The position numbers and the translations under genes are program-made. This document shows positions 19,336 through 64,000 of a stretch of 64,000 nt of DNA, one piece after another; the stretch's first letter is position 1, and each line of letters opens with the position of its first letter. A model generated the notes under the pieces. That model saw only the letters and a program-made list of their open reading frames with translations, did not search any database and was not told where the DNA came from. This stretch comes from Anthoceros angustus. Taxonomy: Eukaryota; Plantae; Anthocerotophyta. Location of the stretch: NCBI GenBank assembly GCA_010909165.1, contig VJWM01000187.1, forward strand, positions 310,001 to 374,000. Reading direction: 5' to 3'.

Positions 19336-19339
19336 GGTC

Positions 19340-32741: not shown

Positions 32742-33179
32742 CATGTGCGGCCTGTGCCTTGCTTGCATTAGTTTATCCCTAGCCATTGTCACATGCATAA
32801 GATACCTGAAACCCTAGCTGCGTATAGGCGGGATGCCTCATGATCATCTTAAACAATCCGGCTGAGTCGATAAAAAAATTCGATGTCCTCTCGGGCGCAT
32901 TTGAGAGGAAATACTTCAAGAAAGGAGCTTCCTTGTGAAAGGATTGAAAGATCACGTTTCCTCTACGCCCTTGTCAATTCTCACCCCCCTGCGAAGGCCG
33001 AGATTACGAATCGGTGATCAACCCCAAAGGAGGCAGTGCATGCAGAATCGGTAAACAAATCCAATTGCATCAAACTCCACAATCCGGTGTCCAAGCGTTA
33101 CCAAGAAAGGTTTACGAACATGATGTTATTCTGAATTCCATCTTGAATGTGCGGAGCACTTTGCTGGAGACTCCTTGGA

Positions 33180-37720: not shown

Positions 37721-38749
37721 GCTGTGCCACCGGTGCTGATTGTATAAGAAAGTCGAGATGAGAGTGCAAAAGGTAGACAAATAGGCTCACCGCTAGGGCT
37801 TCTACACCAGGCTCAAGTAGTTGCACCCCAGTTCTTCCACTCAAAGGTCCGGGAAATGGAGGACGCCATCACGCCCACCGGTATGCGAATCTCCGGCATG
37901 GCGGCGCTGACGCACATTCTCGCAAGTGCCTGAGATTTGCTCTCCGTGCCCTATCCATCCAAAGGAGGCTATACGCAGATGACCGCGAGGTGCAGCTCGG
38001 GACCCTGGCAGAGATGCCCGAACGCTAATCGAGAGGTGCCTGGTGCGGGAGGTTGTTATCTCAAGCGCAACATCTTCCCAAGCAGCCCTACTCCCACCTG
38101 CTACAACTATGCTAAGACGGACAGTAGAACCCGATGTATGGACCCACATGGTAATTCCCCAGAACTATGAGCCCAGAGACAAGTCTGCCTCTAGGTCACC
38201 GACAAGATGATAGGGTGGAGGACAGACGAGACTCAAGCTAACGATCCTCGAACACTCAAGTTTATATCTCATTCTATCTCAAAGGTGACCATGTTCGTGC
38301 AAAACCGGTGGAGATGGGGAGGACTTAGATGGAAATTTTGTGTCCTATTATGGTAAGGTTTCTCAAGATGTCTAATTTGTGTGCCCACTTTTGTTGTGGT
38401 TTCAACCTGCCCGATACACCGTGTCCAAGATCACGAGAGAGGATGGCCGAGGAGTGTGCATGGTCGGATGGATAGAACGAAGACATATCAAGACACAAGC
38501 TCGACTTTGACCCTAATTCCATTGGGCTCCAGAACGAACAAGAGAGGAAAGTCAAGGGCTCATCTCTACCTCCAAGGTTTTGAGGAAGGGATGGTCACAT
38601 AAGTAGAAGCTAGTATTATGGTGAACTAACTGCTACCCATGCCTCCCGACAAACTCTTACTTTTGTGGGACACGCTTTGATGTGAAGTGGTTCTAAGACA
38701 CCCAAGGCCTCTTTGAATTGATAATGCTTCCTAGGTAAGGATTTGGTAA

Positions 38750-44700: not shown

Positions 44701-46150
44701 GCCCCTCCGTGCGTCCGTTCCCTAATACGTAGCCACTTGCACTGCTTCAGCCCAAAACCTGACTGATAGCCTCCTCCCCTGATAGAGAAGAGCTCTAGCA
44801 GCATCCTAAATGGTTCTGTGTCTTCTCTCGGCTCGGCCATTCATGTCTGAGTGATATGGAATTGTGAGTTGTCGAGTAATCCCCCTCTCCTGGCAATACT
44901 CCTGAAAAGCTGTGGATAAATACTCCTTTCCATTATCAGAATGGATACACTTCAATTTATAACCTGTTTGTCTCTCTGCATATGCGAGGTACCGCTTGAA
45001 GCTGTGGAACACATCACTCTTGTGGCGAAGGAGCTCTGTCACAGTAAAATGTGACTTGTCATCTTCAAACACGACGAAATATCTTGCACCTCCCCAAGAG
45101 TTCACATGAGTCCACATATGTCGGTATGAACGAGTCAAGTATCTCAGCCTTTCTTGGTTTCCACACTACCAAAATGGGATTGTTTCACATGCACAGGTGC
45201 CACGGCGATCAATGTCGTAGTTCCTTCTCACTAAAACCGATTTACCATCCTCTCTCGAAGAAGTCTCCTCATCGCTTGGATATTGGGATGTCCCCGAGCA
45301 GTGCCATTAAATGCATTACTTGCAATGGTACCGACATCGATATTAGCTACGTGTGGGACGTCTGAGGCAAAATCCAGCAAATAAAGGTCGAATAGAGGGG
45401 TTCCTCGAGCAATCACCACTGAAGGTACTGGTAGTCTAGAAATATGGCATTCGATACCTTCGAATGTGATTCGCATCTTGGCTTTGTCTTCCCAAGTGCC
45501 ATAGTCCTAACCAAGTTCTTTGCAAGTGCTGGAACATGTAAAGCTCTCTCCAAAAGTAGGTAACTTCCGTCCTTTAAAAGTATTTGAATGTCTCCCGATC
45601 CTTTGATTGGGATTATTGAGTTATCTCCTAACACCACCAGTCACAGCATGTGGGAGATGGCTCATATGTGATAAAGACTTCCTCTTTGAACACATGTGAT
45701 TGGAGGCTCCAACATCCGAGAACCATTTACATCACCTTTGAGATAGGATAGATATAAACTTCTGTGTATTCCAGATCAAGGTACCGTCTTCATTACTACC
45801 CTTGTCATCTTGCATGGGTGACCTAGAAGTACCAGTCTCCGGGCTCATAGCTCAGAATTACCACTGTCCACTCCTTTTCCGCTGGGCCTGTCTCAGCTTT
45901 AGCATAGTTGTAGCAAGATGGGGAGCAGGTCGCAGAAGATGTTGCGGCCTGGCTTGAGATAAGCAACCTCCGCATCAGCCTTTGCCTCTCTCGACCTGCT
46001 TCCGCAGGCATCTTCGCCCGGTGTCGGTGCACCTCTCCGCTACCATCTTGCGATAGCCTCCTTTGGATGGATAGGGCATGAGGAGCAAATGCGGGGCACT
46101 GTAATGTGCGTCGAGCACCGCCATGCCGGAGATGCAACTTGGGCGGCTAA
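38750..46150 (-). mobile_element. Ty1/copia retrotransposon internal region (gag end, protease, integrase, RT, RNase H), degenerate, split by a 3.8-kb insertion
   Basis: Domains appear in copia order PR-INT-RT-RH: GASNHM-like protease (~45700); integrase GARYFVVFEDDKSHFT..CIHSDNGKEY (45138-44806), continuing as TPFEAWTGVKPDLSHLRVFG (~40900); [33 protein letters not shown] and LYVDD (40081-39442); and RRILRYLKG (~39180). Confidence 0.92.
40952..44725. mobile_element. Unclassified 3.77-kb non-coding insertion flanked by a TACGTA direct repeat
   Basis: The copia integrase (..QVATY|LQNRS..) rejoins in frame when the insert and one TACGTA (40946-40951 or 44726-44731) are removed. There are no TIRs or TG..CA ends. 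A hairpin lies at 44657-44690. Confidence 0.8.
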
Positions 46151-46189
46151 GTAGCGCCCCTCCATTCAGCTTTTAGTGGAAGAACTGAG

Positions 46190-47438
46190 ACATGCAACTA
46201 ATGTGCCCGTGTAGAAGCCCTATATGTGAGCTTCATTTTGTCTACCTTTTGCACTCTCATCTCGACTTTCTTCCTACAATCCTTTACCCGGGCTGGCTTT
46301 CCACAAGAATTACAAGGCCTCAAGGGCCCCAGCAGGTGGTGTCAAGGTGTCTCCACTTGCTCTCTCGCATAAACAAAGTCCCCACGGAATTTCTTGAGCT
46401 TGGGTCCGGCCACCGCGGTGTGGGCATATCTAGGGTGTCTCATGTTGGGCAATCCTCAAATTAGCCATGGCCGCCGGCATGGCTTGTCAAACACGGCCGC
46501 ACATTTGTGACCGATAACCGTGCCAAATTGCTTGGATCATCGGATCCACTACCTCATAGAGTTGCTTGGCAATGGAGCTAGAAGGCATGGGTTCCCTCCC
46601 AAACAAAGAAGAAGTAGGGACTGAAATGTGCCAAGGAGGCATGCCAACTCATACGGTAGCCCATGGCGATGTAGGGAAGAGCCAAGTCCCACTCTGTCTT
46701 TGGCATTTGAAGGCAGAGCTTCCTTAGACCCTTCTTGATGGTCTGTACCATCCATTCAGCCAGGCCATCAGCCTGAGGGTTCTGGATGGTGAAGGAGGTC
46801 TTCACCCTGTCGCAGTCCTTGCAACAGGCCACCTGCTGTTTGACTTGGGCGTACATCCCTTGCCAATGGAAATGTGGGAGGAGCAACTGTAAGTACGCTT
46901 GACTCCAAAATGGCCCATGCCGCTGCGTGCACTTTCGATGAATCGCCTGCTCCTCATCAAAGAGCCCATTGAGTCAGCCTCCTCGGCAAATGCCCATCAC
47001 GCCATCGACACTCTGGAAGCGCTACCGCAATTCCTTTCTTGCTCAACAGTGCTCCATGGTCGATCCAAACCCGTCCTGTTTGGACAAATAGGAGAGTTTC
47101 GGAGTCTTCCATATGTCCTTGGACCTCCTGCCCCAAAGATATGTGCTCACTGCAAGGATCGTCCCATACTGGATCGTCTTGATACTCTCTGGATCGCCCC
47201 ATACCTGATGGGCCACCTGTGCTTGTAAAGCTTACCATGATAAGCCCACCCCACATGCTGCATCTCCATCATCTTGGTCTCTCGCTTCAGAACATCTTCA
47301 ACCAGCACTGGGATTCCGAGAGAGAGTGTCATGCGTTTTGGTGTGTGACTCCGGCTTGCACCACTTGAAATTCATAGTCTCAAAAGATCATGGCTCCACC
47401 TTAAAAGCTTCCACTCAACTTAGTGTTGGTCATCAGCC
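46190..47438 (-). mobile_element. Second Ty3 lineage fragment (RNase H end plus integrase), inverted counterpart of 36658-37720
   Basis: LLPHFHWQGMYAQVKQQVACCKDCDRVK (integrase Zn finger) and GLAEWMVQTIKKGLRK..WDLALPYIAMGYRMSWHASLAHFSPYF. The LTR junction is the same as at 36657. Confidence 0.85.
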
Positions 47439-50400
47439 ATGTGGTGGGAGGTTCCGGGACCCCGGAACCCTCGGCCACCAGCCACACTTATCCCCTTGTC
47501 GGTTAAATACAGTGGGTTTCGTTCCACGAAGGGTGAGCCCTTCCCGCCTCGGATGGAGGTGCGCCCTCACGGTGACCTCTCGACTCTCGGCTCCCGTCTA
47601 GGCGGTGACGCCCCTCCTACGGCGCCACCGGTGACCCACCCTAGGTAAGTCACTACCCTTGTGATGACTCGCCGTGGTGGACCTCGCGAGGCACGCCCAA
47701 TGCACCCTTGGGGACCCCAAATCACCGTCTGATGGGCAATCCTCCCACCAGCAGTTCCTACACTCCCTAAGACCCTTCTCGTGACAAATTTGGGGCCGCC
47801 CCTCAAGCTCTCTTATCCCCTTGAAATTCACCTTCCCTCTCTTTTCTAGGTTTCTTCCTCCTCTCTTCTCTTTTGTCTTTTCTCTTTTCTCTCTTGCTCC
47901 TTCCTTCTCCTCTCTTGCTCCCTATCCTCTCTAGCTCCTCTCTCGCCCCTCTCTCGCCTCTCTTTTCTTTTCTCTTTTCTCTCTCTCTCTTCTCCTCTCT
48001 CTCTCTCTCTTCTCTAATCTACCTCTTCCACTCTTCCTAGCTAACCCGCCTGGGCGCCTCCCGGCCTCCAGCCACCTCGGATCATAGGGCATGCCCTCAC
48101 GGACCTAGGCACATTTTCGCAAGTGACGCCCCAGCGTCTTTGGATTTTGCTAGGGGTCTTCCTTCACCGCTTGTCGCACACTACAACCACAATGCCGCTC
48201 CTCACGCTCGAACGCCACCCATTGCTCCAAAGAAAGTTTTGGGCCCCGCCTCCTCACATCAGACCTCAAGACCCTACCGGACACCATGCACCTCACACAC
48301 GGCTTGCGCACGCAGGTGTAAAACAAGCACACAGTCGGAGAGCAAGGCATGACATTTTATTATGGAGCTCCTCCCCTCTTATAGGAGCTCCCCAAACCCT
48401 AGCATTAATTAAGTCTGGTGGGGTAGGTGGGGTTGCTTACGGTTTTAAGTAGGTGGCCTCTTAAAGGTTCTTAACCTACCTCCTAACAATCCCACTAACC
48501 CCTAGGGGTCTTAATGACCCATTCACTCCCCTACCAACTCTCGCCTACTTCTTCTTGGGTGGGGCAGTGCCCTACCACCATCTTCCTCCTCTTGGCTTGG
48601 GGACTGTCCGTCGGATCTCTTCACTCGTCAGCGACAGAACCTCCACACTGTCTTGGCGATGCATCGTGAACGCCCTCTTGCGGGCGCTCTAGCAGGCATT
48701 GGCCTCTCTCATCTGTCTGCCACTGCAGTACCTCCAGTGCGGTTGAGTGCAATGCAACTCCTTGCCGGACACCCCCACCAACTCTACCGGCTGGAAATCT
48801 CTTCCTCTTCCATTGGCTCCTCCCACCAGCGTTCCTACACTCCCTAAGACCCTTCTCGTGACAAATTTGGGGCCGCCCCTCAAGCTCTTATCCACCCTTG
48901 AAATTTCACCTTCCTCTCTTTTCTAGGTTTCTTCCTCCTCTCTTCTCTTTTGTCTTTTCTCTTTTCTCTCTTGCTCCTTCCTTCTCCTCTCTTGCTCCCT
49001 ATCCTCTCTAGCTCCTCTCTCGTCCTCTCGCTCTCTCTCTCGCTCTCTCTCTCTCTTTTCTCTCTTTTCTCTCTCTCTTCTCCTCTCTTCTCCTCTCTTC
49101 TCTAATCTACCTCTTCCACTCTTCCTAGCTAACTATCATACAGGCGCCCTCACAGCCTCCCGGCAGCGCCTCGAGATCATAGGGCATTGCCCTCACGGAC
49201 CTAGGCGGACATTTGGGGCAAGTGGCGTCCGCGTCTTTGGATTTTGCTAGGGGTCTTCCCTTCGATCCTTTGCACCAACCACAATGCGCTCCCTCACCGC
49301 TCGACTGCCGGTGCTACCTCCGAGAAAGAAGGTTTGGGCCCCGCCCTCACCACAGTCACCGCACCTCAAGACCCTACGGACACCATGCACCCTCACACGG
49401 TCGGCACGCGCTTGTGTAGCAAAACAAGCACACAGTCGAGAGCAAGGCATGACATTTTATTATGGGAGCTCCTCCCCTCTTATAGGAGCTCCCCAAACCC
49501 TAGCATTAATTAAGTCGGTGGGGTAGGTGGGGTTGCTTACGGTTTTAAGTAGGTGGCCTCTTAAAGGTTCTTAACCTACCTCCTAACAATCCCACTAACC
49601 CCTAGGGGTCTTAATGACCCATTCACTCCCCTACCAACTATCCTACTTCTTCTTGGGTGTTGGCCCAACCACCATCTTCCTCCTCTTGGCTTGGGGGTCC
49701 CCGTCAGGATCTCTTCACTCGTCGTCGCGGCCTCCACACTGTCTGGCGTGATTGAGCGGTGGGCGCCACCCCTCTTGCAGGCGCTCTTGTAGGCATTGGC
49801 CTCTCTCATCTTGCAGCCGGCCCTGCTACCTCCAGGCGGTTGGGTGTTGGTGCTGCTCTGTCCGCAGACACACCAACTCAAACTGCTGGAAATCTCTTCC
49901 TCTTCCATTGGCTCCTCCCATTGAGCCTTCGCATCCATTCACTTCCCCCGAATCTGAGGCGGTGCAATTCTTCAAAATCTCCACTGTCATTTGGGGACCC
50001 CAACAACTTCCTTGTCAACAAGTTGAAGATGACTGCATCAGGTGTCAGCAACATGTAAGTGGACCCACAGCCACAAAAAGAAAAGCCTCAAGGAGGACTC
50101 AAAGGATCCGCCAGAAGGAGGCATTTTGTGATCAGTCTCCTCAACTTATTTTGACAATGGGTTGACAGATGCGGCTCATTCTGATGAGCATTGGGCCTAT
50201 TCATGTGGAATTGGTTGAGTTTTGCTACTCCTTCCAGTGGGCACCAGGATGTGCACTCAAGGATGGGTGTCCTCGTGCTTTGGCAGCTGATGGTGTCCCA
50301 CTGGTGAGCTTGGCCTCTCTCTCTTCTCCTCTCCCAGGGTGAGCAGCCTTTCTTTAGGGCTAAGATTCCCTCAAGTGGAAGCTTTTTGATTGTTTTAGGT

Positions 50401-53400
50401 AGACTCATCGTCCACCTACTTGTCTCATTCTTTCTTCATGTGTGAAGCAAACCTCCTGGCGAGGAACTACCATCTTGCCATCAGACACTGCTGAGGCCAC
50501 ATGTTGTACAATGAGAGACTGATTTAACTCCTACTTACCTTGTCTTATATGGAGTGTCAATTGGCGGGATGGTCGCCTTCCTTGTCAAAGCCTCCTTCAT
50601 TGACCCTCACATAGTGGACTTGCATCTCACCCCTTCCTCTCATCAAATTCCTCAGCCACTCTCTTGAGGCTAACTTACTCCACGCATCCTCTCAAGCCAC
50701 CACTCAAACGGGTGGCGACATCACCATCTCTCCATGCCTGGGTTCCCTTGCTGCCTTCTCACCTGGGAGTTGCTTCCTCGATGACCAGCATGCGATGCAT
50801 CATTTTCTCCCGTGGCTACCTCTTCCATCCACCGTTGGTCAATCGCTTGCTTCAGAGCTCCTCACGCTCCTTGCTTATGTCCTTCCTCCTCCGCCTTGAG
50901 CTTGGCCTCTCCTTCATTCTGGCTTATGCGCCCGGCTCACAAGCCATCTTGTCCATTTGTCCCTTCTCACTGGAGGGCCGAGTTGTCCGCCATTCCCATA
51001 TCCTCAATCTTCTCGGTTGAGAGCCACCTCCTTCATTATCCTCTACTTTCTTGCCTCGATTGTTCTTCAATCTTCTAGCCCCAACCTCCTCTCCAGTTAA
51101 CTAGGCTTTGCTACGCCATCTCCTTGATAGCCTTGCTATCCTTCTCCCCACTTGATCGACGGCCTTGGTGTCCTCACGGCGACTCTCACCTCCAACTCTC
51201 TCTCCTGTGCTTGCTTCACTAATGGAGTATCAATCCTACGATGGTCAGCTCCTTCAAAGCCTTTGTCCTCTCATTCCCTCCCGGGTCGACATTGCTTTTC
51301 TTGGTGAGCGCCTCCACTCCCTCGATGTTGGTGGAACTCCGTGGCTCCCATCTCCCGGGGTTAGTTCCACACCCCGCCTCCTTTGCCTCAGACATGGTGG
51401 TCCTCACCTTTTCCTTTTGTGCCACCTGCTTCCCTGAAGTGCACCTCTTCTTCCTCAAGGCCAGACGGGGTGGTCTCATCATCCGAATCACCCCGGGTGA
51501 AGCACTCCCTTGCTCCACCTTGGTTCCTCCTCCGCCTTCTTCACCTTCTTGGGAGAGGACCTTCCTCGACCACTTCAAATGGTCTCAAATCCTCTGTCGA
51601 TCCCGATTTTCTCCTCTAAAATTCTTCTAAGTGTTCTCTGTGTCCGCCCCTTCGCCTGGTCTCATCCTCCTCGACCAACTCAAATGAGCTAAACGCTCCC
51701 CCTCTACTCACATATATAGGGTGAGGAGGGATTTTCCACACCCCAAAGGCCAAGGACGAAAATTTTCCCTGTCCAAAGGCCAAGGACCTTTTCTCCTTCA
51801 GCAGACGTTAGAAATTCCTCAACCACCGAAGGCCAAGGAAGAAATTTCTCCGCTGTTCACCAATTCCCAAAGTCCAAGGAAGAAAAATCAGCAGGCATGC
51901 AAAGGTCGACCCGCCACGTCGCACTAACCCGCGCCGGTCTTCCTTTGTCAAAACCCTCCAAGGCCAAGGACGAAATTTCCCTGTCCAAGGCCAAGGATGA
52001 TTTCTCTATATATGCTTGCATCGCTCCTCCTTAGGCCGCGCCTCTTCCTCTCCTGTCTGTCGCTCAAGACCACCTCCAACCTCGCTACCGCCTGAATTGC
52101 GCACGACAACTCGCCAAGACCCTCGCGCGTCTTCGTGGAGTAAGAACCTTACTCCCGATGCCTTCAGGCGGGAGTGACTGGCGCCGCCACTAGGCCGGCA
52201 CCAACCCTCCTTCTTGGCGGTTCGGCCTTCGCGAACCTCCTCTCTCACAGTAAACTTTCCAACCTCCCGGACCTCCGGACCTCCGTCTTTCTCCATTGGA
52301 CCTTTTTGAATCCGTTTTCCTCCTTCTCGTCGGCGGGACTAAAATCGCCCGCCCGCTTCTCATTGGCACTTTTTGTTCTCTTCCCGTCAATGATGGTGAT
52401 AAAAAGAAAAATAAAATTAACAAAACTAAGAGGCATCCGCCTCTCTTCTAACCGTGGACCCAAAATTTGGCGTTCCACATGCCCCTTCCCACTTGTTGGC
52501 GTCCACCAAACAACGGGACTCAAGTGAAAATACTTCTTGACCTTCCGCCCCATCGACAGGAGGTCTCCATCCAAGACTCGGATTGCACTCCATTCTCATA
52601 CACCTCCTCAACCTTGTAGGGTCCCATCCACCTCAATCTCAACTTTCTGGAAAATCTAAGTATCGTCATACACGAACACCAAATCTCCAGCCACAATCAC
52701 TTCTCTCTTTGAAGCTTCCGTCATGTCGATGCTTCCGTTGTTCTTGGATCTTGTAGGTCTCCTCAAGTGCCTCTTCTCGGTCCTCCTCATAAGTCGCGAA
52801 AGCCTCCAATCATTGTTTGATCGTCCTCCAGTCATCCTTACGTCCTCCATGATTCGATGTGTTGGAATCTCAAACTCAATTGGTAACACTGGTGACATCC
52901 GTAGGTCGATAGTAGGCGTTCGTTTCGTGGTTACCTTCTCATTGTCCGATATGCCCAAAGTCTTTGAATGAAGCTTCGTGTCCCATCATACATGTGTGTG
53001 ATCACCTTAGTCAAAATGGTACCCGAATCTGGTCTTCTCGTGAGGCCATTTGCCTTCGGGTTGTAAGGCGTTGTCTTGCGGTGTCGTATGTTGAAGTAGC
53101 TGGTCAACGACTCAATGACAGTGTTCAAGAAGTGAGTTCCTCGGTCACTCACCAACTCCAAGGGACAACCATACCGTGTGATGATGTTCTCAAACAAAAA
53201 TTTTGCGACTGTCGGAGCGTCATCCTTCCTTGTCGCCTCCGCCTCTACCATCTTGGTGCAGTAATCGGTGGCCACCAATATGTATTGCTTCCGAGTCCAC
53301 CTGGTAGGTGGGCGAATCGGCCCAACAAAGTCGATTCCCCACTTCTCAAAAGGAGCGAGTGGCAGAATGTAGGTCAGTGGCCACTGTGTGGACAGTGTCG

Positions 53401-56400
53401 GCCTCCCTACACGCTGACACGCGTCGCATCTCCTAATAGAATCCCAAACATCACGTTGCATGGTAGTCCACCAAAAGCCTGTATCCAAAATCTTCTTAAT
53501 CGTGACACGAGTAATGACCCCCGCCTCCTCCGCATGTAAAGCCTCAATCACCAAACCGCCTGGGCTCCAGACACCTTCGTATCTTCTCATCCGCCCCATC
53601 TTGTACAAGATTCCATTCCTCAAGCGATGAGGCTACCTTATGAAGAAAAAGCGCTCGTCCTTCCCTACTCAATCCATTGGGCATGATTCCTAACTCCGGG
53701 AACTTTTCCCCTTGCCTTTCTCTATTTGCTCTATCTTGGCGCTCTCCGTCTTGTCCACACACAGTCGATCGAACTTCCCTCTGCGGTTAGGATCCATTTG
53801 TGTTGGACCACTGCACGTCGTGCAGCCTTGTGCTCTTACATGCAGGGCTCCCTTCCGACCCTACATTGCGTAACTTCCTCTTCATCCTCTGCTGATGTCG
53901 CGACCAACTCCTCGTCGAAACCTATCGTCCGTCTCCGGACCTTTCTTGTTCTCAACCTCGAGATGAAATCTGCGTTGATGTGTCTCTTACCCGCTCGCGT
54001 CTCAACATCAAAATCAAATTCTTGCAGCAAAAGAATCCATCGAGCAATTCGTCCCGACAAATCCGGCTTGTTCACTAGGTACTTCAGCGCAAAATGATCG
54101 ACGTGGAAGGTTACCTTGCAGGCCAAGAGGTAGTGGCGAAACTTCTTGCATGCGTAGATGATTCCCAACGCCTCCCTCTCAGTCATAGAGTAATTTCTCT
54201 CCGCGTCAGTCAACTGCCTGCCCGCGTAGAAGATAGGATGATCCCTCTTCTCTTCATCCTTCTGGCTCAGAATAGCCCCAAGCGCATACGCAGATACATC
54301 CACGTACACATGAAATGGCTGCTCCCAATTTGGTGGTCTCAAGGTGGGTGTCTCCACCAAACTCCTCTTTAGTTGCTGAAATGATTCCTCTTTCCTTGTC
54401 CACTCAAATGCTACGTCCTTCTTTGTGAGTTAGACGGCTGCCTTCTTTGCAAAATCTTTGACGAATCTCCTGTAATAGCCGACTAACCCTATGAAAGCTC
54501 TGACCTGCCTGACTGTCTGAGGTGCATCCATCTCGATCACCTTGACTTTCTCCATGTCCACTTGGAGTCCTCTTGCTGAAACTCGATGAGCGAGGAGAAT
54601 CCCCTCCGTCATCCCGAAAAAACACTTCGGTGAAGTTTTAGGTTGGTCTCACGGCAACGTTGAAAACACCGGCTCGGATGTTCCCAATGTGAGTGTTGCC
54701 TCCCAAAGACACAAAATCGTCAAGAAACACTTCCATGAACTTGAAGAAAATCTCTAAAGATCATTTACCACTCGTTGGAAAGTTGCGGGCATTGCAGTCC
54801 GAATGGAAGCTTGGCGTGAGCAAGCGTCCCCAATCCGTGGTGAAAGTGGTCTTGTCTTGATCCTCCTTGCGTGGCGTGATTTGATTGTAACCCGAATAGC
54901 CATCTAGGAAACTGTACATTTCATGACCCGCCACCGTGTCCAAAACGCTATCCATGAAGGGTAGTGGATGGTGGTCCTTCTTCGTCGCTTTGTTGAGCCT
55001 TCTGAAATCTTGACAAACACGAACCTTGCCTTGTTGCTTCTTAGGAACCACCACGATGGGCGCCACCCATTCGCTGGTGAGAACCGGATAAATCACCCCT
55101 GCCTCTAAGTACTGGTCCAATTGGTCCTTCACCAACTTGAAGGAACCCATATCAGTGACCTTAAAGGCAAATACATCTATGTAGTTCCTTAGTAAGGCCT
55201 TCAACTCCTCTCGCTCCGTCGGGCTGAGATACTTTGAAACTTTCACACTTTTGCCCGGCTTCAACTCCATGTCCTCCATCGCGTGGTCTACATAAACTCC
55301 TTCAGGCTCACTTGCCCACACTCGTGCGATCCTTCCTCTGGAAAGTCGTGATCGTGGCGTGACCCTTCAAAAGGCGGCACCCTCTCGGTGCTCCTCATCC
55401 TCCTGCAAATCTTCTTCCTCCAGACGTCGGATGAAAACATGGGATCCCCGTCCCATACACCATATCGATTGCTTTGGCTGGTCCTTGAAATAAATTATTC
55501 TGAGTCTCTCCCGTAAGCGTTCTCCCGCTCGACCAGTAACTCCGCCTCCCAAAATCAAAGATGCACCCCCATGTACCACGGCCTCCCAAGAAGTACCTTG
55601 TACCCCAAGTCCAGAATCGGTCTCATCACAATGTAGGTCGATTGAAGGTAATACCTCCAATCACCGTGGGGATGTTCTGCAGCACCCCAAAGGCTTTCTC
55701 TTGGTCCGCCATTCGAAGAAGACACGAATGGGAATTCGTAAACCCAAGTCGATGTCTTGTCTCTTGGTCATCAAATTCACTCGGATCCGTGTCCAAAGGG
55801 ACATCGGCACTAAACACCCTATCTCAATCTCAATCTCGGGGCTCCACAATCAACCAGTTCCACCGCGTTAACTTCCACTTGCATGCTCCTTACCTCTAGT
55901 GGCTCTGGTATCCCCCGTATCGCCTCCTTCACGATCTTCCTCGATCTTGGACTCACCGCCAAGAGATCTCTCAAGCTCACTACAAACTCTTGATCAAGTA
56001 GCGCATCAAAGCTAGAAATCTTTGATGCTAGAACCCCTCTTGCGGTCTCGATACTAGCGAGGCGCAACAACGCCCTCTCTTGGTTGTTCCTCACTCGGCG
56101 CCTCTCCTTGCGCACCTTGCCCTCCACGGGTCACTCACTGCAGATTCAGCAAACCTTTTTTGAGTCGGCCTCCTCATTCATCTTCCAACATCACGAACTT
56201 CCTTGATGTCTGTGGAAACGAGGGTCTCCACCTCCTCCGCAGTGGTTCACCTCCTCTCGCCTCGTAACCTCCTGGACTCTCCTTCGCCCTCATTCTCCTC
56301 CAACACCGGATCAGGTGTCCCTTGTCTCGTCTCAGGTGGCCAAGGTGAATCCTCGCGCACCTTCCTCTTCTTCTTGTCTGTCTTCTCCTTCCGTCGGTCT

Positions 56401-59400
56401 ACCCTTCGTTCCTTCTCTCGCCGTTCGGATCGTGTGGTGACCTTAGCCACCAAGGGATCTTCTCCATCACTTACTTCTCCTGCATATCCCTCCTCCACAA
56501 TCCCTGAGTAGACCTGCAAAGCCTCTTGTGGTTCTTCTTCTTCTTCCGCCTCCACCGTCAACACCGGCGTGTTAGCTACCGCGATGGCCGTCTCCGTGTT
56601 GATGGGGATTGTCTCCGTTCTTTGGTTGGTGATTCGACTCGGCCGTATAGGCACGATGCGTAACACTCTGGGCACCTTGGATCTCCCACTTTGTGCCCCA
56701 ATTCTTTGCATACAGCGAGAAGGGCACATAGCCTACTGCGTCGAGGTTACGGGCGATGCAGCGCAGTGACTGGCATTCCACAGTTAAAACAACATCACGA
56801 GAGCGGACATTGGGCGTTGTGAAGGATCCGGCCTCCACGGTCTGGTGGCGGTCGTGAACTATAGCGCATCCTGAAGGCGCCGGTTGGTAAGTCGGCCTCC
56901 TCATTCATCTTCCAACATCACGCAACTTCCTTGCGATGCGGTGGAAGCGTGGGGTCTCCACCTCCTCCATGAGTGGTTGATCTCCTCTCGCCTCGTAACC
57001 TCCTGGACTCTCCTTCGTCGTCATTCATCCTCCTCCAACACCGGATCGGTGTCCCTTGTCTCGTCTCGGTGGCCAAGGTGAATCCTCGCGCACCTTCCTC
57101 TTCTTCTTCTTATACATCTTCTCCTTTCGGTCTACCCCACCGTTCCTTCTCTCGCCTTCGGATCGTGTGGTGACCCTAGCCACCAAGGGATCTTCTCCAT
57201 CACTTACTTCTCCTGCATATCCCTCCTCCACAATCCACAGTAGACTGCAAAGCCTCTTGTGGTTCTTCTTCTTCTTCCGCCTCCACCGTCAACATGCGTG
57301 TTAGCTACCGCGATGGCCGTCTCGTGTTGATGGGGATTGTCTCCGTTCTTTGGTTGGTGATTCGACTCGGCCGTATAGGCACGATGCGTAACACTCTGGG
57401 CACCTTGGATCTCCCACTTTGTGCCCCAATTCTTTGCATACAGCGAGAAGGGCACATAGCCTACTGCGTCGAGGTTACGGGCGATGCAGCGCAGTGACTG
57501 GCATTCCACAGTTAAAACAACATCACGAGAGCGGACATTGGGCGTTGTGAAGGATCCGGCCTCCACGGTCTGGTGAAACCGGTGCGTGAACTATAGCGCA
57601 TCCTGAAGGCGCCGGTTGGTAAGTCGGCCTCCTCATTCATCTTCCAACATCACGCAACTTCCTTGCGATGCGGTGGAAGCGTGGGGTCTCCACCTCCTCC
57701 ATGAGTGGTTGATCTCCTCTCGCCTCGTAACCTCCTGGACTCTCCTTCGTCGTCATTCATCCTCCTCAACACCGGATCGGTGTCCCTTGTCTCGTCTCGG
57801 TGGCCAAGGTGAATCCTCGCGCACCTTCCTCTTCTTCTTCTTATACATCTTCTCCTTTCGGTCTACCCCACCGTTCCTTCTCTCGCCTTCGGATCGTGTG
57901 GTGACCCTAGCCACCAAGGGATCTTCTCCATCACTTACTTCTCCTGCATATCCCTCCTCCACAATCCACAGTAGACACCGCAAAGCCTCTTGTGGTTCTT
58001 CTTCTTCTTAGCCTCCACCGTCAACACCGGCGTGTTAGCTACCGCGATGGTCTCCGTGTTGATGGGGATTGTCTCCGTTTGGTTGGTGATTCGACTCGGC
58101 CGTATAGGCGCGATGCACACTCCACAGGCACCTTGGATCTCCCACTTTGTGCCCCAATTCTTTGCATACAGCGAAGGGCACATAGCCTACGTCGAGGTTA
58201 CGGGCGATGCAGCGCATAGTGACTGGCATTCCACAGTTAAAACAACATCACGAGGGGACATTGGGCGTTGTGAAGGATCCGCCTCCACGGTCTGGTGGCG
58301 GTCGTGAACTATAGCGCATCCACGAAGGCGCCGGTTGGTAAGTTGGCCTCATTGGCTGCGGTGGTCGCCCTCCACCGCCAGCTTGTAAGCTTCATCAACA
58401 TACCGGTAGTCACACGGTGTATAGGCTTCTACAGTTGTTGCATGTCTTGGCGCTTTGACACACTCTCGATTCGTATGGCCTGATTGGTGACAGATCGAAC
58501 AATACACTAATACGCGGTGAAGGAGATCTCCTAGGCGCTGGTTGCGCGCTTTGACCTCCAATTCAGTCAATCTCCTTGTCAAAGCCTCAATTTGGTTGTT
58601 TAGACCTCCACCACCTATCGTGGCGTTGCTCCTCTCCATTCGGTGCGCTCCTTTACCTTCTTGTCTTTCTCGCTTGGCGCTCGGCCTCTTCTTCTTCGCT
58701 CAATCTTCTCCAAATCCTTCTTCATTCTCCTTCGTAGGCTCTGACTCCTCATCCGTGGGTGACTCGATGCGACTTCCTTGTTCGTGTCGTGAAGGCGAAG
58801 AATGAGAGGACGAGGAGAGCTGGAGGATCTGCCTCCCTTATGCTTCCCATGCTCCCTCCGCTTCTTCCTTGACGACCAAGCTCGCCTCGTAATCTTCAGC
58901 CAACTTCAATGCTCCTTAGTAGTCGTTCCTCTCCGACAAGAACATCCATCTTAGTGGGCAACCACTTACAAACCAATCTAACGCTCATCTGAATAGCCTC
59001 GTGGTAGGACCTGAACAAGCTGGTCTACACCTTGGAACGCGATCCAAGTAACTGTAGAACCTCTCCACGTAATCATACAGCGTTTCCTTCTTTCTCCTGC
59101 GGAGAGTCCTCAATCTCGCCAATGTATGATGTCCATGACTCAACCCTCTAAACCTTGTTAGGAACTCTGATTTGAAGTCTTCCCAATCTGTCGGTGGTGC
59201 AGTCCCATACGTCCTACTGTACCACTGTTGTGCGTGTCCTCTTAACAAACCCGGAAAAATTCGCAAACGGTCCGCCGCTGAATCCTCTAAATTAGCATGA
59301 GAGACATGCTCAAACGTGCGAATAAAAGCCTCGCATCGTCTCCCTTCTTCTTGTCTCCAAACTTCACATACTGCTGTCGACTATGTGGCTGCAATGAGCC

Positions 59401-60400
59401 ACCTCCTCCTACCGTGGTGCCTCCCCCTGCACCAACTCCACTCATGTTGGTGTTGTTGCACCGGGCGAACGACACCACCGCGCCCTGCTCTTCCGCTTAG
59501 TACACCTCGATGTGTCCGCCTCCGGAGGGTACCGCTCGATTGTTGTCTTGGACTCAGAATGTCCTTCCAATGTGACTCAGTACTCCTGGATCAATCGTCC
59601 TTCTTGGTTCTTCCAACTCTTCACCTTCACCGTGAAGTGCAAAATCTTCTTCTTCAAGTGCGTCGAGAAGGCACAAAATCCTCTTCCTCCCTCGAGCGCG
59701 TCTCTCGGACTTCTTTCTAGTTGATTCCTCCGTGTCGCCGAACTCTCTTGGTGAAATATATGGAGATGACCTTCCTCCGGATGCTCTTCGTTCACCACGT
59801 CCTCCGGTCATCGGCGTACATCTTCACACTCTCCATTCGAACAAAGAAAAACACACAACCCACTCCCGCAAGCGGCGCCAAAAATGTGGTGGGAGGTTCC
59901 GGGACCCCTCCCCTCAGAGCGGCCACACTTATCCCACTGTCTGTGCAAGAGGTTTCGTTCCCACGAAGGAGTGGGGAGCCCTTCCCACCTGGGAATGGAG
60001 GGTGTGCGCCTCCCCGACCGACCTCTCGACTCTCGACTCCGACAGTGCGCCGATGCGCCCCTCCTACTACCGCCCGGTGACCCACCCTCGGTAAGTCACA
60101 CTCTACGGCGATGACTCGTCGGCGGACCTCTCGCGCGAGAGGCACCGCCTAACTGCATGCGACCTTGGGGACCCCAAATCACCGTCTGATGGGCAATCCT
60201 CCCACCAGTTCTTACACTCCCTAAGACCCTTCTCATGACAAATTTGGGGCCGCCCCTCAAGCTCTTTTGTCATGCCTTGAAATTTCACCTTCCCCTCTTT
60301 TCTAGGTTTCTTCCTCCTCTCTTCTCTTTTTGTCTTACGGTTTTTAAGTAGGTGGCCTCAAAGGTTCTTAACCTACCTCCCAACAATCCCACTAACCCCT
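47439..60400 (-). mobile_element. Near full-length Ty3/gypsy element C (non-chromovirus, Athila/Phygy/Selgy-like): 5' LTR ending at 59885, PBS, gag, PR, RT, RH, INT, 3' cargo ORF, and 3' LTR ending at 47439
   Basis: PBS TGGCGCCGCTTGCGGGA at 59864-59880; gag core 59266-58985; CSICHQSGH knuckle ~58500; protease 56127-55561; RT (VCQDFRRLNKAT..YSFLDGYSGYNQI, FLDD ~54725); RNase H 54360-53836; integrase (WGIDFVGP, VSDRGTHF) 53623-52931; GPY/F module ~52620. No chromodomain was seen. The LTR 5' starts are not resolved. Confidence 0.9.
56164..58345. repeat. Tandem triplication of a ~730-bp unit inside the gag-protease linker of element C
   Basis: GTCGGCCTCCTCATTCATCTTCCAACATCACG recurs at about 56164, 56892 and 57623, and the ORF track shows the same peptides three times. 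Confidence 0.92.
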
Positions 60401-61258
60401 AGGGTCTTAATGACCCATTCACTCCCCTACCAACTATTTGCCTACTTCTTCTTGGCATGGACAGTGCCCTACCACCGCTCTTCCTTCTCTTTTGTCGGGG
60501 ACCGCTCGTCCGGATCTCTTCACCGCTGCACAGAGCCTCCACTGTGATATCGAATTTTGTTTTCCGAGGGCACTCACGACTTGAAAGACCTCGCACTTTC
60601 CTTGCGCATTTCGAGCTGGAACAAAAGCAGTCTGCAAAATCCTTGGGCGGATAGCTTTGAGACGCGGATTTCCTCGGTGCGCTGCTCGTCATGCACGGCC
60701 CTCATTTCTAGGAGGTCCACCAACTTCCCAACAACCCCTGGTCAAGGCTATAGCTGCAGTACCCAAAGCCTCGTAGATTTCTTGCATTGACCGAGGAGTC
60801 CTTTCTTCTTTACAAGCCACGTACATAGCGGCCACACACGTCTCTTCACAACTCCCTTTTCTCAAGACCCTCGCCTTCTTGTACAAGGAACTTGCCAATA
60901 CTGCGTGTTGTGCACAATTCTCATTCTTCTGCGAGCTCGAAATCCTATCAAAGCGGATATCAGTCATTGCCATGAGTGGGAACCCGTGCATTCGTGTTCC
61001 AGGTGGATGCAACCCATTTTCCTTTGCTGTAGTGCGGATGCAAGTGGTTAGGCCAGCATGGTCGAGCAAGTCATCCGTGTCGTGGGGCGTCCCACACGCT
61101 CCTTCTCCTCGTGCTCGGTGTCATTATCGAACTTCCTATATTCCAAGGTTTCGCCGATCGACGTTCTTCTAACACTAGACCGCACTCTGCAAATGCCGCC
61201 TGCACTGCTGTCCTCATAAATCTGTCTTTATCTTGCACTCTAGACATTTCGACTCCAT
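60399..61258 (-). pseudogene. TFIIB-like (general transcription factor IIB) coding sequence, intronless, frameshifted, second cyclin repeat truncated
   Basis: Manual frame repair from ATG 61258 gives MESKCLECKIKTDLxEDSSAG..ICAECGLVLEERSIGETLEYRKFDND..ERVGRP..DDLLDHAGLTTCI..FDRISELAERMRIVHNTQVLASSLYKKARVLRKGSCEETCVAAMYVACKEERTPRSMQEI..PKDFADCFCS. This is collinear with plant TFIIB (C-x2-C..C-x2-CGLVLE, IDETSEWRTF, RVGGP, LTTVI, AACLYIACR..PRT.KEI, DF..RFCS). Confidence 0.85.
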
Positions 61259-61440
61259 ATTCTCGTCACGAGATAATTAAAAAGTGGAATGTGTAGCCTT
61301 GAAATCGTTAACCCACGAGGGCTTTGGACAATGAGTGACTAAGCACAATGATTGTTTTTCAAGAAGGATTCCACGGTGACCTTGAACCTTGACACCTTAC
61401 GAGGGCTTGTCCAATGTTTATGAATATATGTAAGTCGCAT

Positions 61441-61533
61441 CCCTCATTTATATACCCAAGTTTTCCTTGGCCCTTGGGAATCTTACGTGGAATTTTGCAT
61501 CCGAAACCCCTAATTACCATGGGCCAAGGAACA
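61441..61533 (-). promoter_or_regulatory. Putative internal Pol II promoter of the TFIIB-like cargo: TATATAAA plus a CCATGGGCCAAGGAACA motif
   Basis: TATATAAA on the minus strand at 61454-61447, ~190 nt upstream of the ATG. The 17-mer at 61517-61533 is identical to 23004-23020, which also lies just upstream of a TATA motif. Confidence 0.55.
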
Positions 61534-62926
61534 ATCATCCTTGGATTTCATCCCTTTTTTCCCCTTAAATTCGCCCCACTTCCTTGAGGTTGATTCCGTC
61601 CTTGGACTTTGGCCTCACAAATTTTTCCACAAAGTTCTTCTAACGGACGCCAAGAGTCCGCTAGCCTACTGCGCCTCGGACGCCGGAGTCTGCCGTCCTA
61701 TTGGCGCACTCCGACACCAAGGCCAAGATGCAGTCCGTCGGCCTACCCGATCGAGCCTCCCACTCCCCAATGCGACGCTCTCGGCCCACGGTTTAGGGTT
61801 ATCGGGCCTACCACTCCCGAGTCGCCGTCCTTCGGCCCTCCGTGAGACTTCTCACCGGTGAGTGCACGTCGCGTGCAATCCCGACCAGAATCGGTGAAGC
61901 TTGAGAAACCGTTTTAATTTTTGAAAGTGTTTCGTAGAAAGGGCCTATGTAAATTAGCCTACTTGTACCAAATATCAAAGGCTATCGCATCAAGCTATGT
62001 TGGAGCTTGAAATGACAACTTGCATGCAGAGAAGGAAGTCAACCAAGAACAACCTTTAGACTAAACCACATCCTTGTAGAGGCGGTGAAAACCAAGCGTG
62101 GGATGAAAACAATCACTACTATTCAAGTTTTGAAAAGGGTGGAGACCCCATTAAAAGCGTTGAGCGTTTTTAGAGGACTTAACTTTCTGAAGGAGAAGCT
62201 CTTTTGCCCACCAAAATTTTCAAACCTCCTAGGAGCAAAGATTTGCATAGTACTAAATTGCAATCAAGAATGTAGGTCGCTAGAATGAAGGTGGCGAGAT
62301 AGTCTAAAATCTTATGTGAAACGAGTCATGTCCATGCACACGATGTTTGATTTAACGTAAGCAAAAATCTTGTCACTAAAGGGCGTGGAAAGGTATTTTT
62401 CAATCCATGAAGTCCATCGGCAAACCTTTAACTTGCATGGTCGGAGTGTGCATGAGTGTAAGTGTTGGGAATGCGTGTTGACGATGCCGACCGTGGAATG
62501 CGATGCGGATGTATGGATGGGCGCGGTCGGATGCATAGGATTCAAACATTGATTAATGGAGGAGTCTGTCACGGCATATATGTCGACTATGTGCGACGCG
62601 ACATACTCCTCACATCATTCTTGGCACCGGGACAAACATTTGACCCCTTGCTTGCAAGCATAACAAATTGGCCGTCATAATGCACATCTATTGATACATT
62701 TAATTTTACGTAGTGAGAAAAAGTCATGACCATCTGCATGCTAGTATGTGAGCTCAGCACACAGTGAGCTATTTGATTGAAGGCAAGTTCACAAGATAAT
62801 CTAAGGCTCAATTCTGAGCTCTTCCAAACAAAAATTCCACTTTGCAAAAACCATGCTTGCATTTTATAACGGATGCATGCGGACGCAAAAATCGGTAAGT
62901 GCTCTTGGCGTACTCACCGCCACGTA

Positions 62927-63210
62927 GTCGCTGCTGCAGGGGCCTCTCGACGCGCCCAGCTTGAATTTTTTCTGGTAGTGCAGTGAATTTTAGAGAGAAT
63001 TGACCTTTTGGTCATTGTTTTACCAGAGTAAAATTCATTACAATATAGTAGAAAATCATCTACCATCAAGGTACAAAACAATGAACCATCCAAGTGGGTA
63101 AAATCATCTACCATCAAGGTAGAAAATAGAGCACTAGAGTAGAAAACATGACGACCAAGTGAATACCAGGTCTAGAAGCTCATTCTAGAAATCCCACCAA
63201 AATCGCTAAT
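62927..63210. repeat. Second, diverged copy of the left end of the 40952-44725 insertion
   Basis: GTCGC..GGGGCCTC..GAGAGAATTGA..TTGGTCATT..AGTAAAATTCATTACAA..TAGAAATCCCACCAAAATC aligns with 40954-41195. It begins right after CACGTA (62921-62926). Confidence 0.8.
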
Positions 63211-64000
63211 CGACAAAACATTTTCATTAAATAATATTCATGCGGATCCGGGATATACAAAAACCAACAAAGAAACCTTTTCTTTGCGAGTTTCTGTATA
63301 TCCGTAATGGCATGAACAAATTCAACTAATGAAGAGTAAATACCAATAGATTGAACTCTGCTAGATTGAACTCTACTTCAACAACAATGGAACCTACAAA
63401 CAAAACGAAAACAGCACACAAACCGTGATTAGGCTGATACTAGAAAACACTGGAAATAATCATAGCAAATACTTAAGAAATGATACTCACCTTATTTAGG
63501 GAAATTTACTGTACAATTATACAGATTGAAAACGTAATTTTCACGACCACTTGGCTTGATTGGCACTTGTACAAAGATCATCATTCGGCAACCAATTGAT
63601 GAAGGCGAGGACTTGGACGAAATTGTCCCTCTTCCCGCAAGGTGACAACCTAATAAAATACAACCATTGATTTTCAATGTATGATTAATAAAGAGCATAA
63701 GAAAACTTACCAATCACGGATTTTCGCGAGATAGCGGCAAATATCTCGAGGCACATTTCCTCGCTCTGTTCTCTTTCCACGCAGCCTTGAACCTCTTGCT
63801 CTATCTGCTGCGCTTGATTTCTCTTGATGCTTAATGTGCTCTTGTCTCCTCTCCACATTTCTCCGCCTCAATCTCAAGGGCTTTCTCTCTTTTGCTTAGA
63901 GACTCGTAATTCAAGCGCTTTACGCCTCTCTATAAGAGCCTCCAAATCCTTTTGCCTGAAACTCCAATTGCTTCATCATCATACTCCAATTCCCGCGATC

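What the first reader, a model, noticed from the sequence alone, without database searches (positions are those of the whole stretch)
60399..61533. A TFIIB homologue carried as cargo by an LTR retrotransposon
Seen in sequence: after repairing several 1-2-nt deletions, an intronless ORF from ATG 61258 encodes the TFIIB Zn ribbon (CLEC..CAECGLVLE), B-reader (IGETLEYRKF versus IDETSEWRTF), B-linker (RVGRP), the whole first cyclin repeat and the start of the second. It then runs into the same C-terminal tail (..IVGRGVNGSLRP) that ends the extra ORFs of sister elements at 49938-49576 and ~35250-35640, directly against the LTR. Established: TFIIB bridges TBP and Pol II and sets the start site, and plant TFIIB genes normally have introns, so an intronless copy implies passage through RNA. 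Inference: a Ty3 lineage captured a TFIIB mRNA and expresses it from an internal promoter. It could be a private basal factor that boosts LTR transcription, or a truncated competitor of host TFIIB. I know of no description of retrotransposon-encoded TFIIB, but I cannot search the literature.
Basis: partly seen in the sequence, partly recalled or inferred. Interest (0 to 1): 0.93.

Follow-up and report, generated by a model that had tools for sequence, protein, structure and literature searches.

The report
Dead TFIIB retrocopy beside an LTR
A broken, intron-free copy of the first three quarters of the plant transcription factor TFIIB really lies next to a retrotransposon repeat in this liverwort-like genome, but it is one decayed copy sitting upstream of the element's front end, so it is probably an ordinary pseudogene and not a working gene carried by the element.

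Summary
The sequence observation holds. On the minus strand, 61258->60546 aligns colinearly, without introns, to codons 3-242 of plant TFIIB: Zn ribbon, B-reader/linker, cyclin repeat 1 and the start of repeat 2. The frameshift-aware score is 189, against 44+-8 for shuffles. At least six frame changes break the reading frame.

- The adjoining LTR ends at 59885. An Athila-type tRNA-Asp/Asn primer-binding site follows, then gag, RT, RNase H and integrase downstream. It is therefore the 5' LTR of the neighbouring element.
- The 2.7 kb upstream of TFIIB holds no retroelement sequence.
- No second TFIIB copy exists in the window.
- The two "sister elements" are inverted duplicates of one locus and lack TFIIB.
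- The shared "tail" is conserved as DNA, not as a reading frame.

TFIIB homology stops exactly where homology to the element starts (60546/60545). Two readings remain:
- An element inserted into a processed pseudogene (about 0.5).
- An RNA-level chimera made by LTR-mediated retroposition (about 0.33). The break falls within 0-2 nt of a conserved exon boundary.

Both are known kinds of event. There is no evidence of function.

The parts
60546..61258 (-). Broken, intronless TFIIB-derived reading frame, equivalent to codons 1-242 of about 312. It holds the Zn ribbon (about 61246-61160), B-reader/B-linker (about 61160-61050), cyclin repeat 1 (about 61040-60730) and the first third of cyclin repeat 2 (60723-60546). 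Frame changes lie near 61216, 61188, 61159, 61067, 60733 and 60639.
61259..64000 (-). Upstream region with no retroelement similarity. Mostly AT-rich (GC 0.36-0.46), with a 300-bp GC-rich island at about 61620-61900 and a TATA-like motif at 61454-61446. Possibly 5' UTR plus host DNA.
60386..60545 (-). 160-nt segment homologous to the sequence preceding, or starting, the LTR in copies A, B1 and B2. It supplies the 'tail' codons and the stop at 60401-60399. It is either the first 160 nt of the LTR (start TG at 60541) or the element's internal 3' end with the polypurine region.
59885..60385 (-). LTR body, ending ...CCTCCCACCACA at 59885. It lacks about 560 nt that copies A and B carry after the first 50 nt or so.
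59868..59880 (-). Primer-binding site TGGCGCCGCTTGC after a TTTT spacer. It matches the Athila-type tRNA-Asp/Asn PBS with one extra base and is the only such site in the window.
   Evidence: papers
52934..59380 (-). Degenerate internal region of element B: gag 59380-58988, a 727-bp x3 tandem repeat 58350-56163, RT 55366-54764, RNase H 54429-53839, integrase 53632-52934.
47440..49938 (-). 3' end of element B: extra ORF 49938-49579, a partial LTR (B1), a 1.1-kb tandem duplicate (B2), and the LTR end at 47440.
45899..47439 (-). 3' flank of B. It carries an integrase H2C2 fragment of another element (46973-46581) and is shared with copy A.
34121..38115 (+). Copy A, an inverted segmental duplicate of B's 3' part plus its flank. 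LTR end at 36657; integrase fragment at 37105-37413.

Best explanation
The locus is a dead, single-copy, intronless TFIIB retrocopy. It was made from a spliced plant-type TFIIB mRNA and has since decayed, with at least six frame-shifting indels. It is cut off after codon 242 by the 5' LTR of a degenerate Athila-like Ty3/gypsy element (element B).

On this reading the LTR starts at the TG at 60541. That is where 5'/3' LTR homology begins, and TGTGG there mirrors the LTR end CCACA. The 'C-terminal tail' is then just the first 160 nt of the LTR read in frame. TFIIB is flanking DNA, not cargo.

Shown: TFIIB identity, absence of introns, the frame breaks, and the LTR-PBS-gag-pol order downstream. 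Inferred: that the element inserted into a pre-existing pseudogene, and that a later rearrangement removed the other half of the pseudogene.

Nothing here functions now. In both this reading and the main rival, the locus is an inactive relic.
For: - TFIIB homology is highly significant, colinear and intronless.
- The adjoining LTR is a 5' LTR. It ends in CA at 59885, followed by TTTT, then TGGCGCCGCTTGC, the only such site in the window. That matches the Athila-type junction described in the papers read. gag lies 490 nt further on, followed by RT, RNase H and integrase.
- Homology between this 5' LTR and the 3' copies begins at 60542-60545 and at no point further upstream. It coincides with TG(TG)GAGG, which forms a perfect 5-nt terminal inverted repeat with the LTR end, extending to 11 nt if one gap is allowed.
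- The 2.7 kb upstream contains no pol, gag or family-related DNA and is mostly AT-rich, like the non-repeat parts of the window.
- There is no other TFIIB-like sequence in the window.
- The density of frame breaks equals that of B's gag and pol.
Against: - The four bases before the TG (ACAG, 60545-60542) also match copies A, B1 and B2. That should not happen if they were target DNA (chance about 1/256).
- The break falls within 0-2 nt of the exon 5/intron 5 boundary of angiosperm TFIIB genes (chance about 3%). A random insertion does not predict this.
- The missing codons 243-312 are not found beyond B's 3' LTR or anywhere else in the window. B's 3' flank is an integrase fragment of another element. 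At least one extra rearrangement is therefore required.
- A second possible LTR start (TGTTGGGAGG, 60385) lies just after the tail's stop codon, inside a 100-nt block that is invariant in all four copies. If that is the true start, 160 nt of element-internal sequence precede the LTR and plain insertion is wrong.
- The copy is more diverged from plant TFIIB (33% identity) than its level of frame damage predicts.
Confidence: 0.5

Rival explanations
1. Chimeric retrocopy made by the retrotransposon's own machinery (LTR-mediated retroposition or gene-fragment capture), now a single dead copy. One route is that TFIIB exons 1-5 were spliced to a cryptic acceptor about 160 nt upstream of the 3' LTR of an element lying in or after intron 5 of the parent gene. 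The other route is that reverse transcriptase switched from element RNA to TFIIB mRNA at a few bases of similarity. The resulting RNA/cDNA carried TFIIB(1-242)-tail-polypurine region-LTR. It came to share its LTR with element B through recombination. On this reading the LTR starts at 60385, and TFIIB was indeed fused to element sequence at the RNA level.
For: - The junction lies within 0-2 nt of a conserved exon boundary, while upstream introns are absent.
- In A, B1 and B2 the homologous sequence is preceded by AG (GAG|ACAG, CAG|ACAG, AAG|ACAG).
- 4 nt of shared sequence sit at the junction.
- TFIIB has the same orientation as the element, and it is the 3' part of the mRNA that is missing. 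This fits a polymerase copying from the element's 3' end into the mRNA.
- The invariant 100-nt block around 60385, and a stop codon just before it, fit a polypurine/LTR-terminus region. This junction is highly conserved in Athila (paper read).
- Partial mRNA copies fused to LTR elements with short similarity at the junctions are documented (PMC5131818; PMC7264820).
Against: - Only one side is flanked by element sequence. Documented cases have element sequence on both sides.
- The LTR is followed by a PBS and a whole gag-pol, so an extra recombination step is needed.
- The junction sits 4 nt from a TGTGG that mirrors the LTR end. On this model that is a coincidence (about 1-2%).
- The exon's expected terminal AG is not present as such.
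- Conservation of the intron position in liverworts was not tested.
Confidence: 0.33
2. A Ty3/gypsy lineage carries a TFIIB-derived gene as a heritable extra ORF, amplified in many copies and at some time functional, either as a private basal factor or as a truncated competitor. This copy would be one decayed member.
For: - All four Zn-ribbon cysteines survive.
- The N-terminal Pol II-binding part is better kept than the cyclin part: 47/97 against 41/132 identities.
- The copy is more diverged from plant TFIIB than its frame damage predicts. This would fit a period of evolution as a separate gene.
- No paper describing retrotransposon-borne TFIIB was found.
Against: - The window holds a single copy, and the related copies lack it.
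- No integrase lies upstream.
- The adjoining LTR is a 5' LTR.
- A search of 1.84 billion representative proteins with the 126-aa piece found no close relative (two hits, E 3e-5 and 6e-4). That collection includes five liverwort proteomes.
- The 'tail' is not conserved as a reading frame.
- The frame is broken at least six times.
Confidence: 0.08
3. Not a retrocopy at all. It would be the large first exon of an intron-poor host TFIIB paralogue, now a pseudogene, with the element inserted at the start of its intron.
For: - The break coincides with an intron position.
- A TATA-like motif lies 190 nt upstream of the ATG in host-like AT-rich DNA.
Against: - It requires the element to have landed within a few bases of the splice donor.
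- It requires loss of four upstream introns while the fifth was kept.
- No downstream exon is found.
Confidence: 0.05

Closest known systems
Processed pseudogene interrupted by a nested LTR-retrotransposon insertion
   Same: Intronless copy of a host mRNA, with disabling frameshifts. It is cut at a sharp boundary where an LTR with TG..CA ends begins, and the element's PBS, gag and pol follow.
   Different: The other half of the pseudogene, a poly(A) tail and target-site duplications could not be found. Four bases before the LTR also match the element. The break coincides with an exon boundary.
LTR-mediated retroposition and gene-fragment capture: maize Bs1, rice retrocopies inside LTR elements, Drosophila chimeras (Tan et al. 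2016, PMC5131818; review PMC7264820)
   Same: A partial mRNA copy, in sense orientation, fused to element sequence near the 3' LTR, with a few bases of shared sequence at the junction.
   Different: Known cases are flanked by element sequence on both sides and replace part of the internal region. Here only the downstream side is element-derived, and that LTR serves as the 5' LTR of a complete-looking element.
Athila-lineage Ty3/gypsy elements with an extra (env-like) ORF between pol and the 3' LTR
   Same: Element B has the order RT-RNaseH-integrase. It has an Athila-type PBS after a short AT-rich spacer, about 3 kb of post-pol sequence with an extra ORF, and a very conserved internal/3' LTR junction.
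   Different: No Athila ORF-1 or env-like domain was detected. Lineage assignment by RT phylogeny was not done. The extra ORF of B has no similarity to TFIIB.
Retroviral capture of cellular genes (oncogene transduction)
   Same: Spliced host sequence joined to viral sequence by splicing or read-through, plus non-homologous recombination during reverse transcription.
   Different: In that model the host gene lies inside a transmissible genome between two LTRs. No such complete unit is seen here.

Membership tests
TFIIB (general transcription factor IIB: Zn ribbon + B-reader/linker + two cyclin repeats) | N-terminal Zn ribbon with two CxxC pairs | tested here: met
   CLEC at 61246-61235, and C-x-EC across a frame break near 61190. 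20/37 identities to Arabidopsis TFIIB-1.
TFIIB (general transcription factor IIB: Zn ribbon + B-reader/linker + two cyclin repeats) | B-reader and B-linker colinear after the ribbon | tested here: met
   ..SIGETLEYRKF..ERVGRPT.. aligns to ..SIDETSEWRTF..NRVGGPT.. 27/60 identities. The piece alone gives no PDB hit.
TFIIB (general transcription factor IIB: Zn ribbon + B-reader/linker + two cyclin repeats) | First cyclin-like repeat (Pfam PF00382) | tested here: met
   PF00382 E=5e-5, 23.6 bits, equal to the cut-off, partial match. TFIIB/TFB are the top PDB hits. Local HMM domain E=1e-9.
TFIIB (general transcription factor IIB: Zn ribbon + B-reader/linker + two cyclin repeats) | Complete second cyclin repeat | tested here: not met
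   Homology ends at codon 242 of 312 (60546). The last 70 residues are not found anywhere in the window.
TFIIB (general transcription factor IIB: Zn ribbon + B-reader/linker + two cyclin repeats) | Uninterrupted open reading frame | tested here: not met
   Six frame changes are needed by eye, eight in the strict alignment.
Extra ORF / cargo gene of an LTR retrotransposon | Lies inside one element, between pol and the 3' LTR | tested here: not met
   The adjoining LTR is followed by PBS, gag and pol. No pol or family DNA occurs in the 2.7 kb upstream.
Extra ORF / cargo gene of an LTR retrotransposon | Present at the same position in other copies of the family | tested here: not met
   Copies A, B1 and B2 carry unrelated sequence there. 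No other TFIIB-like segment exists in the window. Genome-wide copies could not be tested.
Extra ORF / cargo gene of an LTR retrotransposon | Evidence of selection or expression | not testable with these tools
   There is a single copy.
Processed pseudogene (retrocopy) | Lacks the parent gene's introns | tested here: met
   Codons 3-242 map on 710 contiguous nt. Arabidopsis and Escallonia TFIIB genes have introns after codons 118, 126, 169 and 213. The liverwort parent gene was not available.
Processed pseudogene (retrocopy) | Poly(A) tail and target-site duplication | tested here: inconclusive
   The 3' end of the copy is missing, so neither feature can be looked for.
LTR-mediated retroposition chimera | Retrocopy flanked on both sides by parts of an LTR element | tested here: not met
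   Element sequence is found only downstream.
LTR-mediated retroposition chimera | Short shared sequence at the fusion point | tested here: inconclusive
   4 nt (ACAG) are shared at the junction. There is no significant similarity further upstream. The same site is also a plausible LTR start.
Athila-lineage Ty3/gypsy (element B) | RT-RNaseH-integrase order, and a tRNA-Asp/Asn PBS (TGGCGCCGTTGCC) after a short AT-rich spacer | tested here: met
   Domain order. TTTT + TGGCGCCGCTTGC at 59884-59868, with one extra base. Motif taken from the papers read.
Athila-lineage Ty3/gypsy (element B) | Placement by RT/integrase phylogeny; Athila ORF-1 or env-like ORF | not tested
   No reference polyproteins were fetched. 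Pfam found no Athila ORF-1 in the post-pol ORFs.

The most novel reading that the evidence does not exclude
An Athila-like retrotransposon lineage of a liverwort picked up exons 1-5 of the host TFIIB mRNA through a spliced host-element transcript. It then carried this Pol II-binding, TBP-binding-deficient fragment as a heritable extra ORF fused to its own 3' end. The window would show one decayed member. This would be the first mobile element known to encode a general transcription factor fragment.
Probability: 0.1. Interest if true: 0.65.

Novelty: new member of a known kind. Interest (0 to 1): 0.22.

Why it matters
If the plain reading is right, this is routine genome debris: a pseudogene split by a transposon. 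It matters only as a caution that an ORF running into an LTR is not evidence of cargo.

If the chimeric reading is right, it adds a bryophyte example of LTR-mediated retroposition. It would also be an unusually clean case in which the fusion point sits on an exon boundary, pointing to a spliced host-element transcript as the intermediate.

Only a multi-copy family with intact TFIIB reading frames would be of real interest. That would mean a mobile element manipulating basal transcription. Nothing in the window supports it.

Tried and rejected
- **Chance resemblance to TFIIB.** Rejected by shuffles and by other window segments.
- **Giant-virus origin.** The best whole-library hit, P0002, lies on a compact virus-like contig. 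However, plant TFIIB scores clearly higher over the full length.
- **Second half of TFIIB elsewhere in the window.** Not found. The best hits are at noise level. One 11-aa match, RRSPISVDAYV at 43591-43623, is on the other strand and is taken as chance.
- **Weak homology between the TFIIB block or its upstream region and the sisters' internal region.** None was found.
- **Other copies in public metagenomes.** None was found, by protein or by a 24-nt LTR-junction motif.
- **The host's own proteins in the collection.** Six window ORFs are not on record. The closest TOC159 is only 83% identical. Other genomic copies could therefore not be fetched.
- **Relative age of TFIIB and the element from frame-break density.** This does not discriminate: 2.8 against 2.9-3.75 per kb.
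- **RNA structure, Rfam families, tRNA genes and promoter-like sites around the locus.** Nothing informative was found.
- **Short TFIIB pieces against PDB.** No hits.
- **Read-through of the broken frame.** I did not type a read-through into any database tool, and I built no repaired or consensus sequence.
Full report
**Setting.** The window is plant nuclear DNA.
- An intronless 1544-aa TOC159-type gene lies at 9706-14340. Its best relatives are liverworts: Marchantia and Riccia at 83%, Calypogeia at 80%.
- None of six window ORFs is on record in the protein collection. Two metagenome scans also found nothing.
- The host genome itself was therefore out of reach. All conclusions about copy number rest on the window alone.

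**The observation.**
- On the minus strand an ATG at 61258 opens a reading frame that breaks repeatedly.
- Only the longest piece (60689-61069) reaches Pfam's TFIIB repeat: E=5e-5, 23.6 bits, exactly the cut-off. The same piece hits TFIIB/TFB chains in PDB at E about 0.01.
- A search of 1.84 billion representative proteins with this piece gave only two hits: P0001 at E=3e-5 and P0002 at E=6e-4. P0002 sits on a compact, virus-like contig.
- I obtained Arabidopsis TFIIB-1 (P0172) through the search and wrote a frameshift-aware protein-to-DNA alignment.
- Codons 3-242 align colinearly to 61255->60546 with score 189. 200 shuffles gave 43.9+-7.6 (max 71). All other window segments gave at most 58.
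- Plant TFIIBs score highest (189, 186, 179). The virus-type scores 137, fungal about 100 and archaeal-like 95.
- Overall identity is 77/231 (33%) in the strict alignment. By region, in the more permissive alignment, it falls from 54% in the ribbon to 28% in repeat 1.
- Six frame changes are needed by eye, eight in the strict alignment.

**No introns.** Arabidopsis TFIIB-1 and an asterid TFIIB share six intron positions: after codons 118, 126, 169 and 213, inside codon 243, and after codon 268. The window copy has none of the first four. It is most simply a copy made from spliced RNA. That liverwort TFIIB genes have the same introns is an inference that I could not test.

**What the neighbouring LTR is.**
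- The stretch 60542-59884 is the only part of the locus that recurs in the window.
- It ends ...CCTCCCACCACA at 59885. It is followed by TTTT and then TGGCGCCGCTTGC.
- This is the junction described for Athila-type elements: LTR end, a short AT-rich spacer, then a tRNA-Asp/Asn primer-binding site TGGCGCCGTTGCC.
- A gag domain follows at 59380-58988, then RT, RNase H and integrase further down the minus strand.
- The LTR next to TFIIB is therefore the 5' LTR of element B. TFIIB lies upstream of it, not between an integrase and a 3' LTR.
- The 2.7 kb further upstream have no similarity to any retroelement part of the window and no Pfam hit. They are mostly AT-rich.

**The 'sister elements'.**
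- Copy A (34121-38115, plus strand) and copy B (51565-45899, minus strand) share their post-pol region and their LTR.
- They also share 1.5 kb beyond the LTR end, which contains an integrase zinc-finger fragment of another element.
- They are therefore inverted duplicates of one locus. B additionally carries a 1.1-kb tandem duplicate (B1/B2).
- None of these copies has TFIIB-like sequence.
- The shared 'tail' reflects a DNA block of about 190 nt, 100 nt of which are invariant in all four copies.
- Upstream of the last 12 codons the copies differ by 1- and 4-nt indels. A conserved protein tail is therefore not supported.

**The junction.**
- TFIIB homology ends with ..TTC GAT ATC at 60546. The spacing from the DF..FCS motif is the same 32 residues as in Arabidopsis.
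- Homology to A and B starts with ACAG at 60545. No similarity is detectable further upstream.

There are two candidate LTR starts:
- Candidate 1 is the TG at 60541 (TGTGGAGG in A and B). It lies at the homology boundary and forms a perfect 5-nt inverted repeat with the LTR end.
- Candidate 2 is TGTTGGGAGG at 60385. It lies just after the tail's stop codon, in the middle of the invariant block, and has an equally long gapped inverted repeat.

If candidate 1 is right:
- Element B simply inserted into a TFIIB pseudogene.
- The cost is two coincidences: the ACAG match (about 1/256), and the break falling within 0-2 nt of the exon 5/intron 5 boundary (about 3%).
- A rearrangement is also needed to explain why B's 3' flank is not TFIIB.

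If candidate 2 is right:
- 160 nt of element-internal sequence precede the LTR. TFIIB was then fused to the element at the RNA or cDNA level.
- The route would be splicing of exon 5 to a cryptic acceptor (each of A, B1 and B2 has AG just before ACAG), or a template switch as in LTR-mediated retroposition.
- The cost is one coincidence, a TGTGG motif 4 nt from the junction (about 1-2% from the motif density).
- Two further gaps remain: there is no element sequence upstream, and a recombination is needed to place a PBS-gag-pol behind the LTR.

Weighing this with the low reported share of LTR-associated retrocopies (27 in rice), I put insertion into a pseudogene at about 0.5 and a chimeric retrocopy at about 0.33.

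**Function.**
- The density of forced frame switches in the TFIIB block (2.8 per kb) equals that of B's gag and pol (2.9-3.75 per kb). The copy is as dead as the element.
- The T copy of the LTR also lacks about 560 nt that A and B carry.
- A TATA-like motif 190 nt upstream of the ATG is the only basis for an 'internal promoter'.
- One oddity remains. The copy is more diverged from plant TFIIB than its frame damage suggests, and the N-terminal part is better kept than the cyclin part. The parent may have been a divergent paralogue, or the copy may have evolved as a gene for a time.

**Literature.**
- Capture of host gene fragments by plant LTR retrotransposons is established. Examples are Bs1 and the hundreds to thousands of cases reported in rice and sorghum (PMC7264820).
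- LTR-mediated retroposition with short junction similarity is also established (PMC5131818).
- Two full-text searches found no paper describing a retrotransposon-borne TFIIB.

**Verdict.** The TFIIB identity and the passage through RNA are real. The cargo and function interpretation is not supported by the anatomy. The finding is a new example of a known kind of event.

Noticed in passing
window 9706-14340 (+): An intronless 1544-aa TOC159-type chloroplast import receptor gene (GTPase plus membrane-anchor domains). Its best relatives are liverworts at only 83% identity, so the host is a liverwort-like plant that is absent from the protein collection.
   Followed up: partly
window 35574-35680, 48538-48430, 49638-49530, 60434-60335: A block of about 100 nt at the internal/LTR junction is invariant in all four copies, although the copies otherwise differ by 12-23%. 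The RNA fold is not unusual (z=-0.1). Possible explanations are a polypurine/attachment region, low mutability or gene conversion.
   Followed up: partly
window 34121-38115 (+) versus 51565-45899 (-): An inverted segmental duplication of about 4-5.7 kb. It comprises the 3' part of a Ty3/gypsy element, its LTR, and 1.5 kb of flank with an integrase fragment of another element. The two arms lie about 7.8 kb apart.
   Followed up: partly
window 56163-58350: Three tandem copies of a 727-bp unit (91-94% identity) sit inside element B between gag and the protease/RT region. Tandem Repeats Finder misses them because the period exceeds 500.
   Followed up: no
window 47740-49920: A 1.1-kb tandem duplication (86% identity) at the 3' end of element B. 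It repeats the end of the extra ORF, the junction block and the first 740-900 nt of the LTR.
   Followed up: partly
window 15500-27900 (-), with tandem duplications 24678-27902 and 29871-33727: A second, related degenerate Ty3/gypsy element. Its gag is 44-47% identical to B's, and an RT fragment lies at 18407-18285. Its gag region is tandemly duplicated (1.6 kb x2, 81%). A further unexplained 1.9-kb x2 tandem repeat lies next to it.
   Followed up: no
window 7006-7078 (-), 7249-9370: A tRNA-Trp gene lies next to a pair of inverted repeats (7249-7555/9370-9072 at 90%; 7713-8328/9052-8442 at 80%), just upstream of the TOC159 gene. This may be a foldback or terminal-inverted-repeat element.
   Followed up: no
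window 3924-4315: A tandem array with a period of about 51 bp (87-92% identity), seen in the self-comparison.
   Followed up: no
window 61620-61900: A 300-bp GC-rich island (GC 0.56-0.66) with repeated GGACGG-like motifs, set in AT-rich DNA upstream of the TFIIB copy. Its origin is unknown.
   Followed up: no
L001/L002 (contigs carrying P0002): One of the two whole-library hits to the TFIIB piece (P0002, E=6e-4; the other, P0001, scored better at E=3e-5) is a TFIIB homologue on compact, intron-free contigs. These contigs have many orphan genes plus NUDIX and RNase H genes, which is typical of giant viruses. Over the full length, plant TFIIB fits the window copy better.
   Followed up: yes
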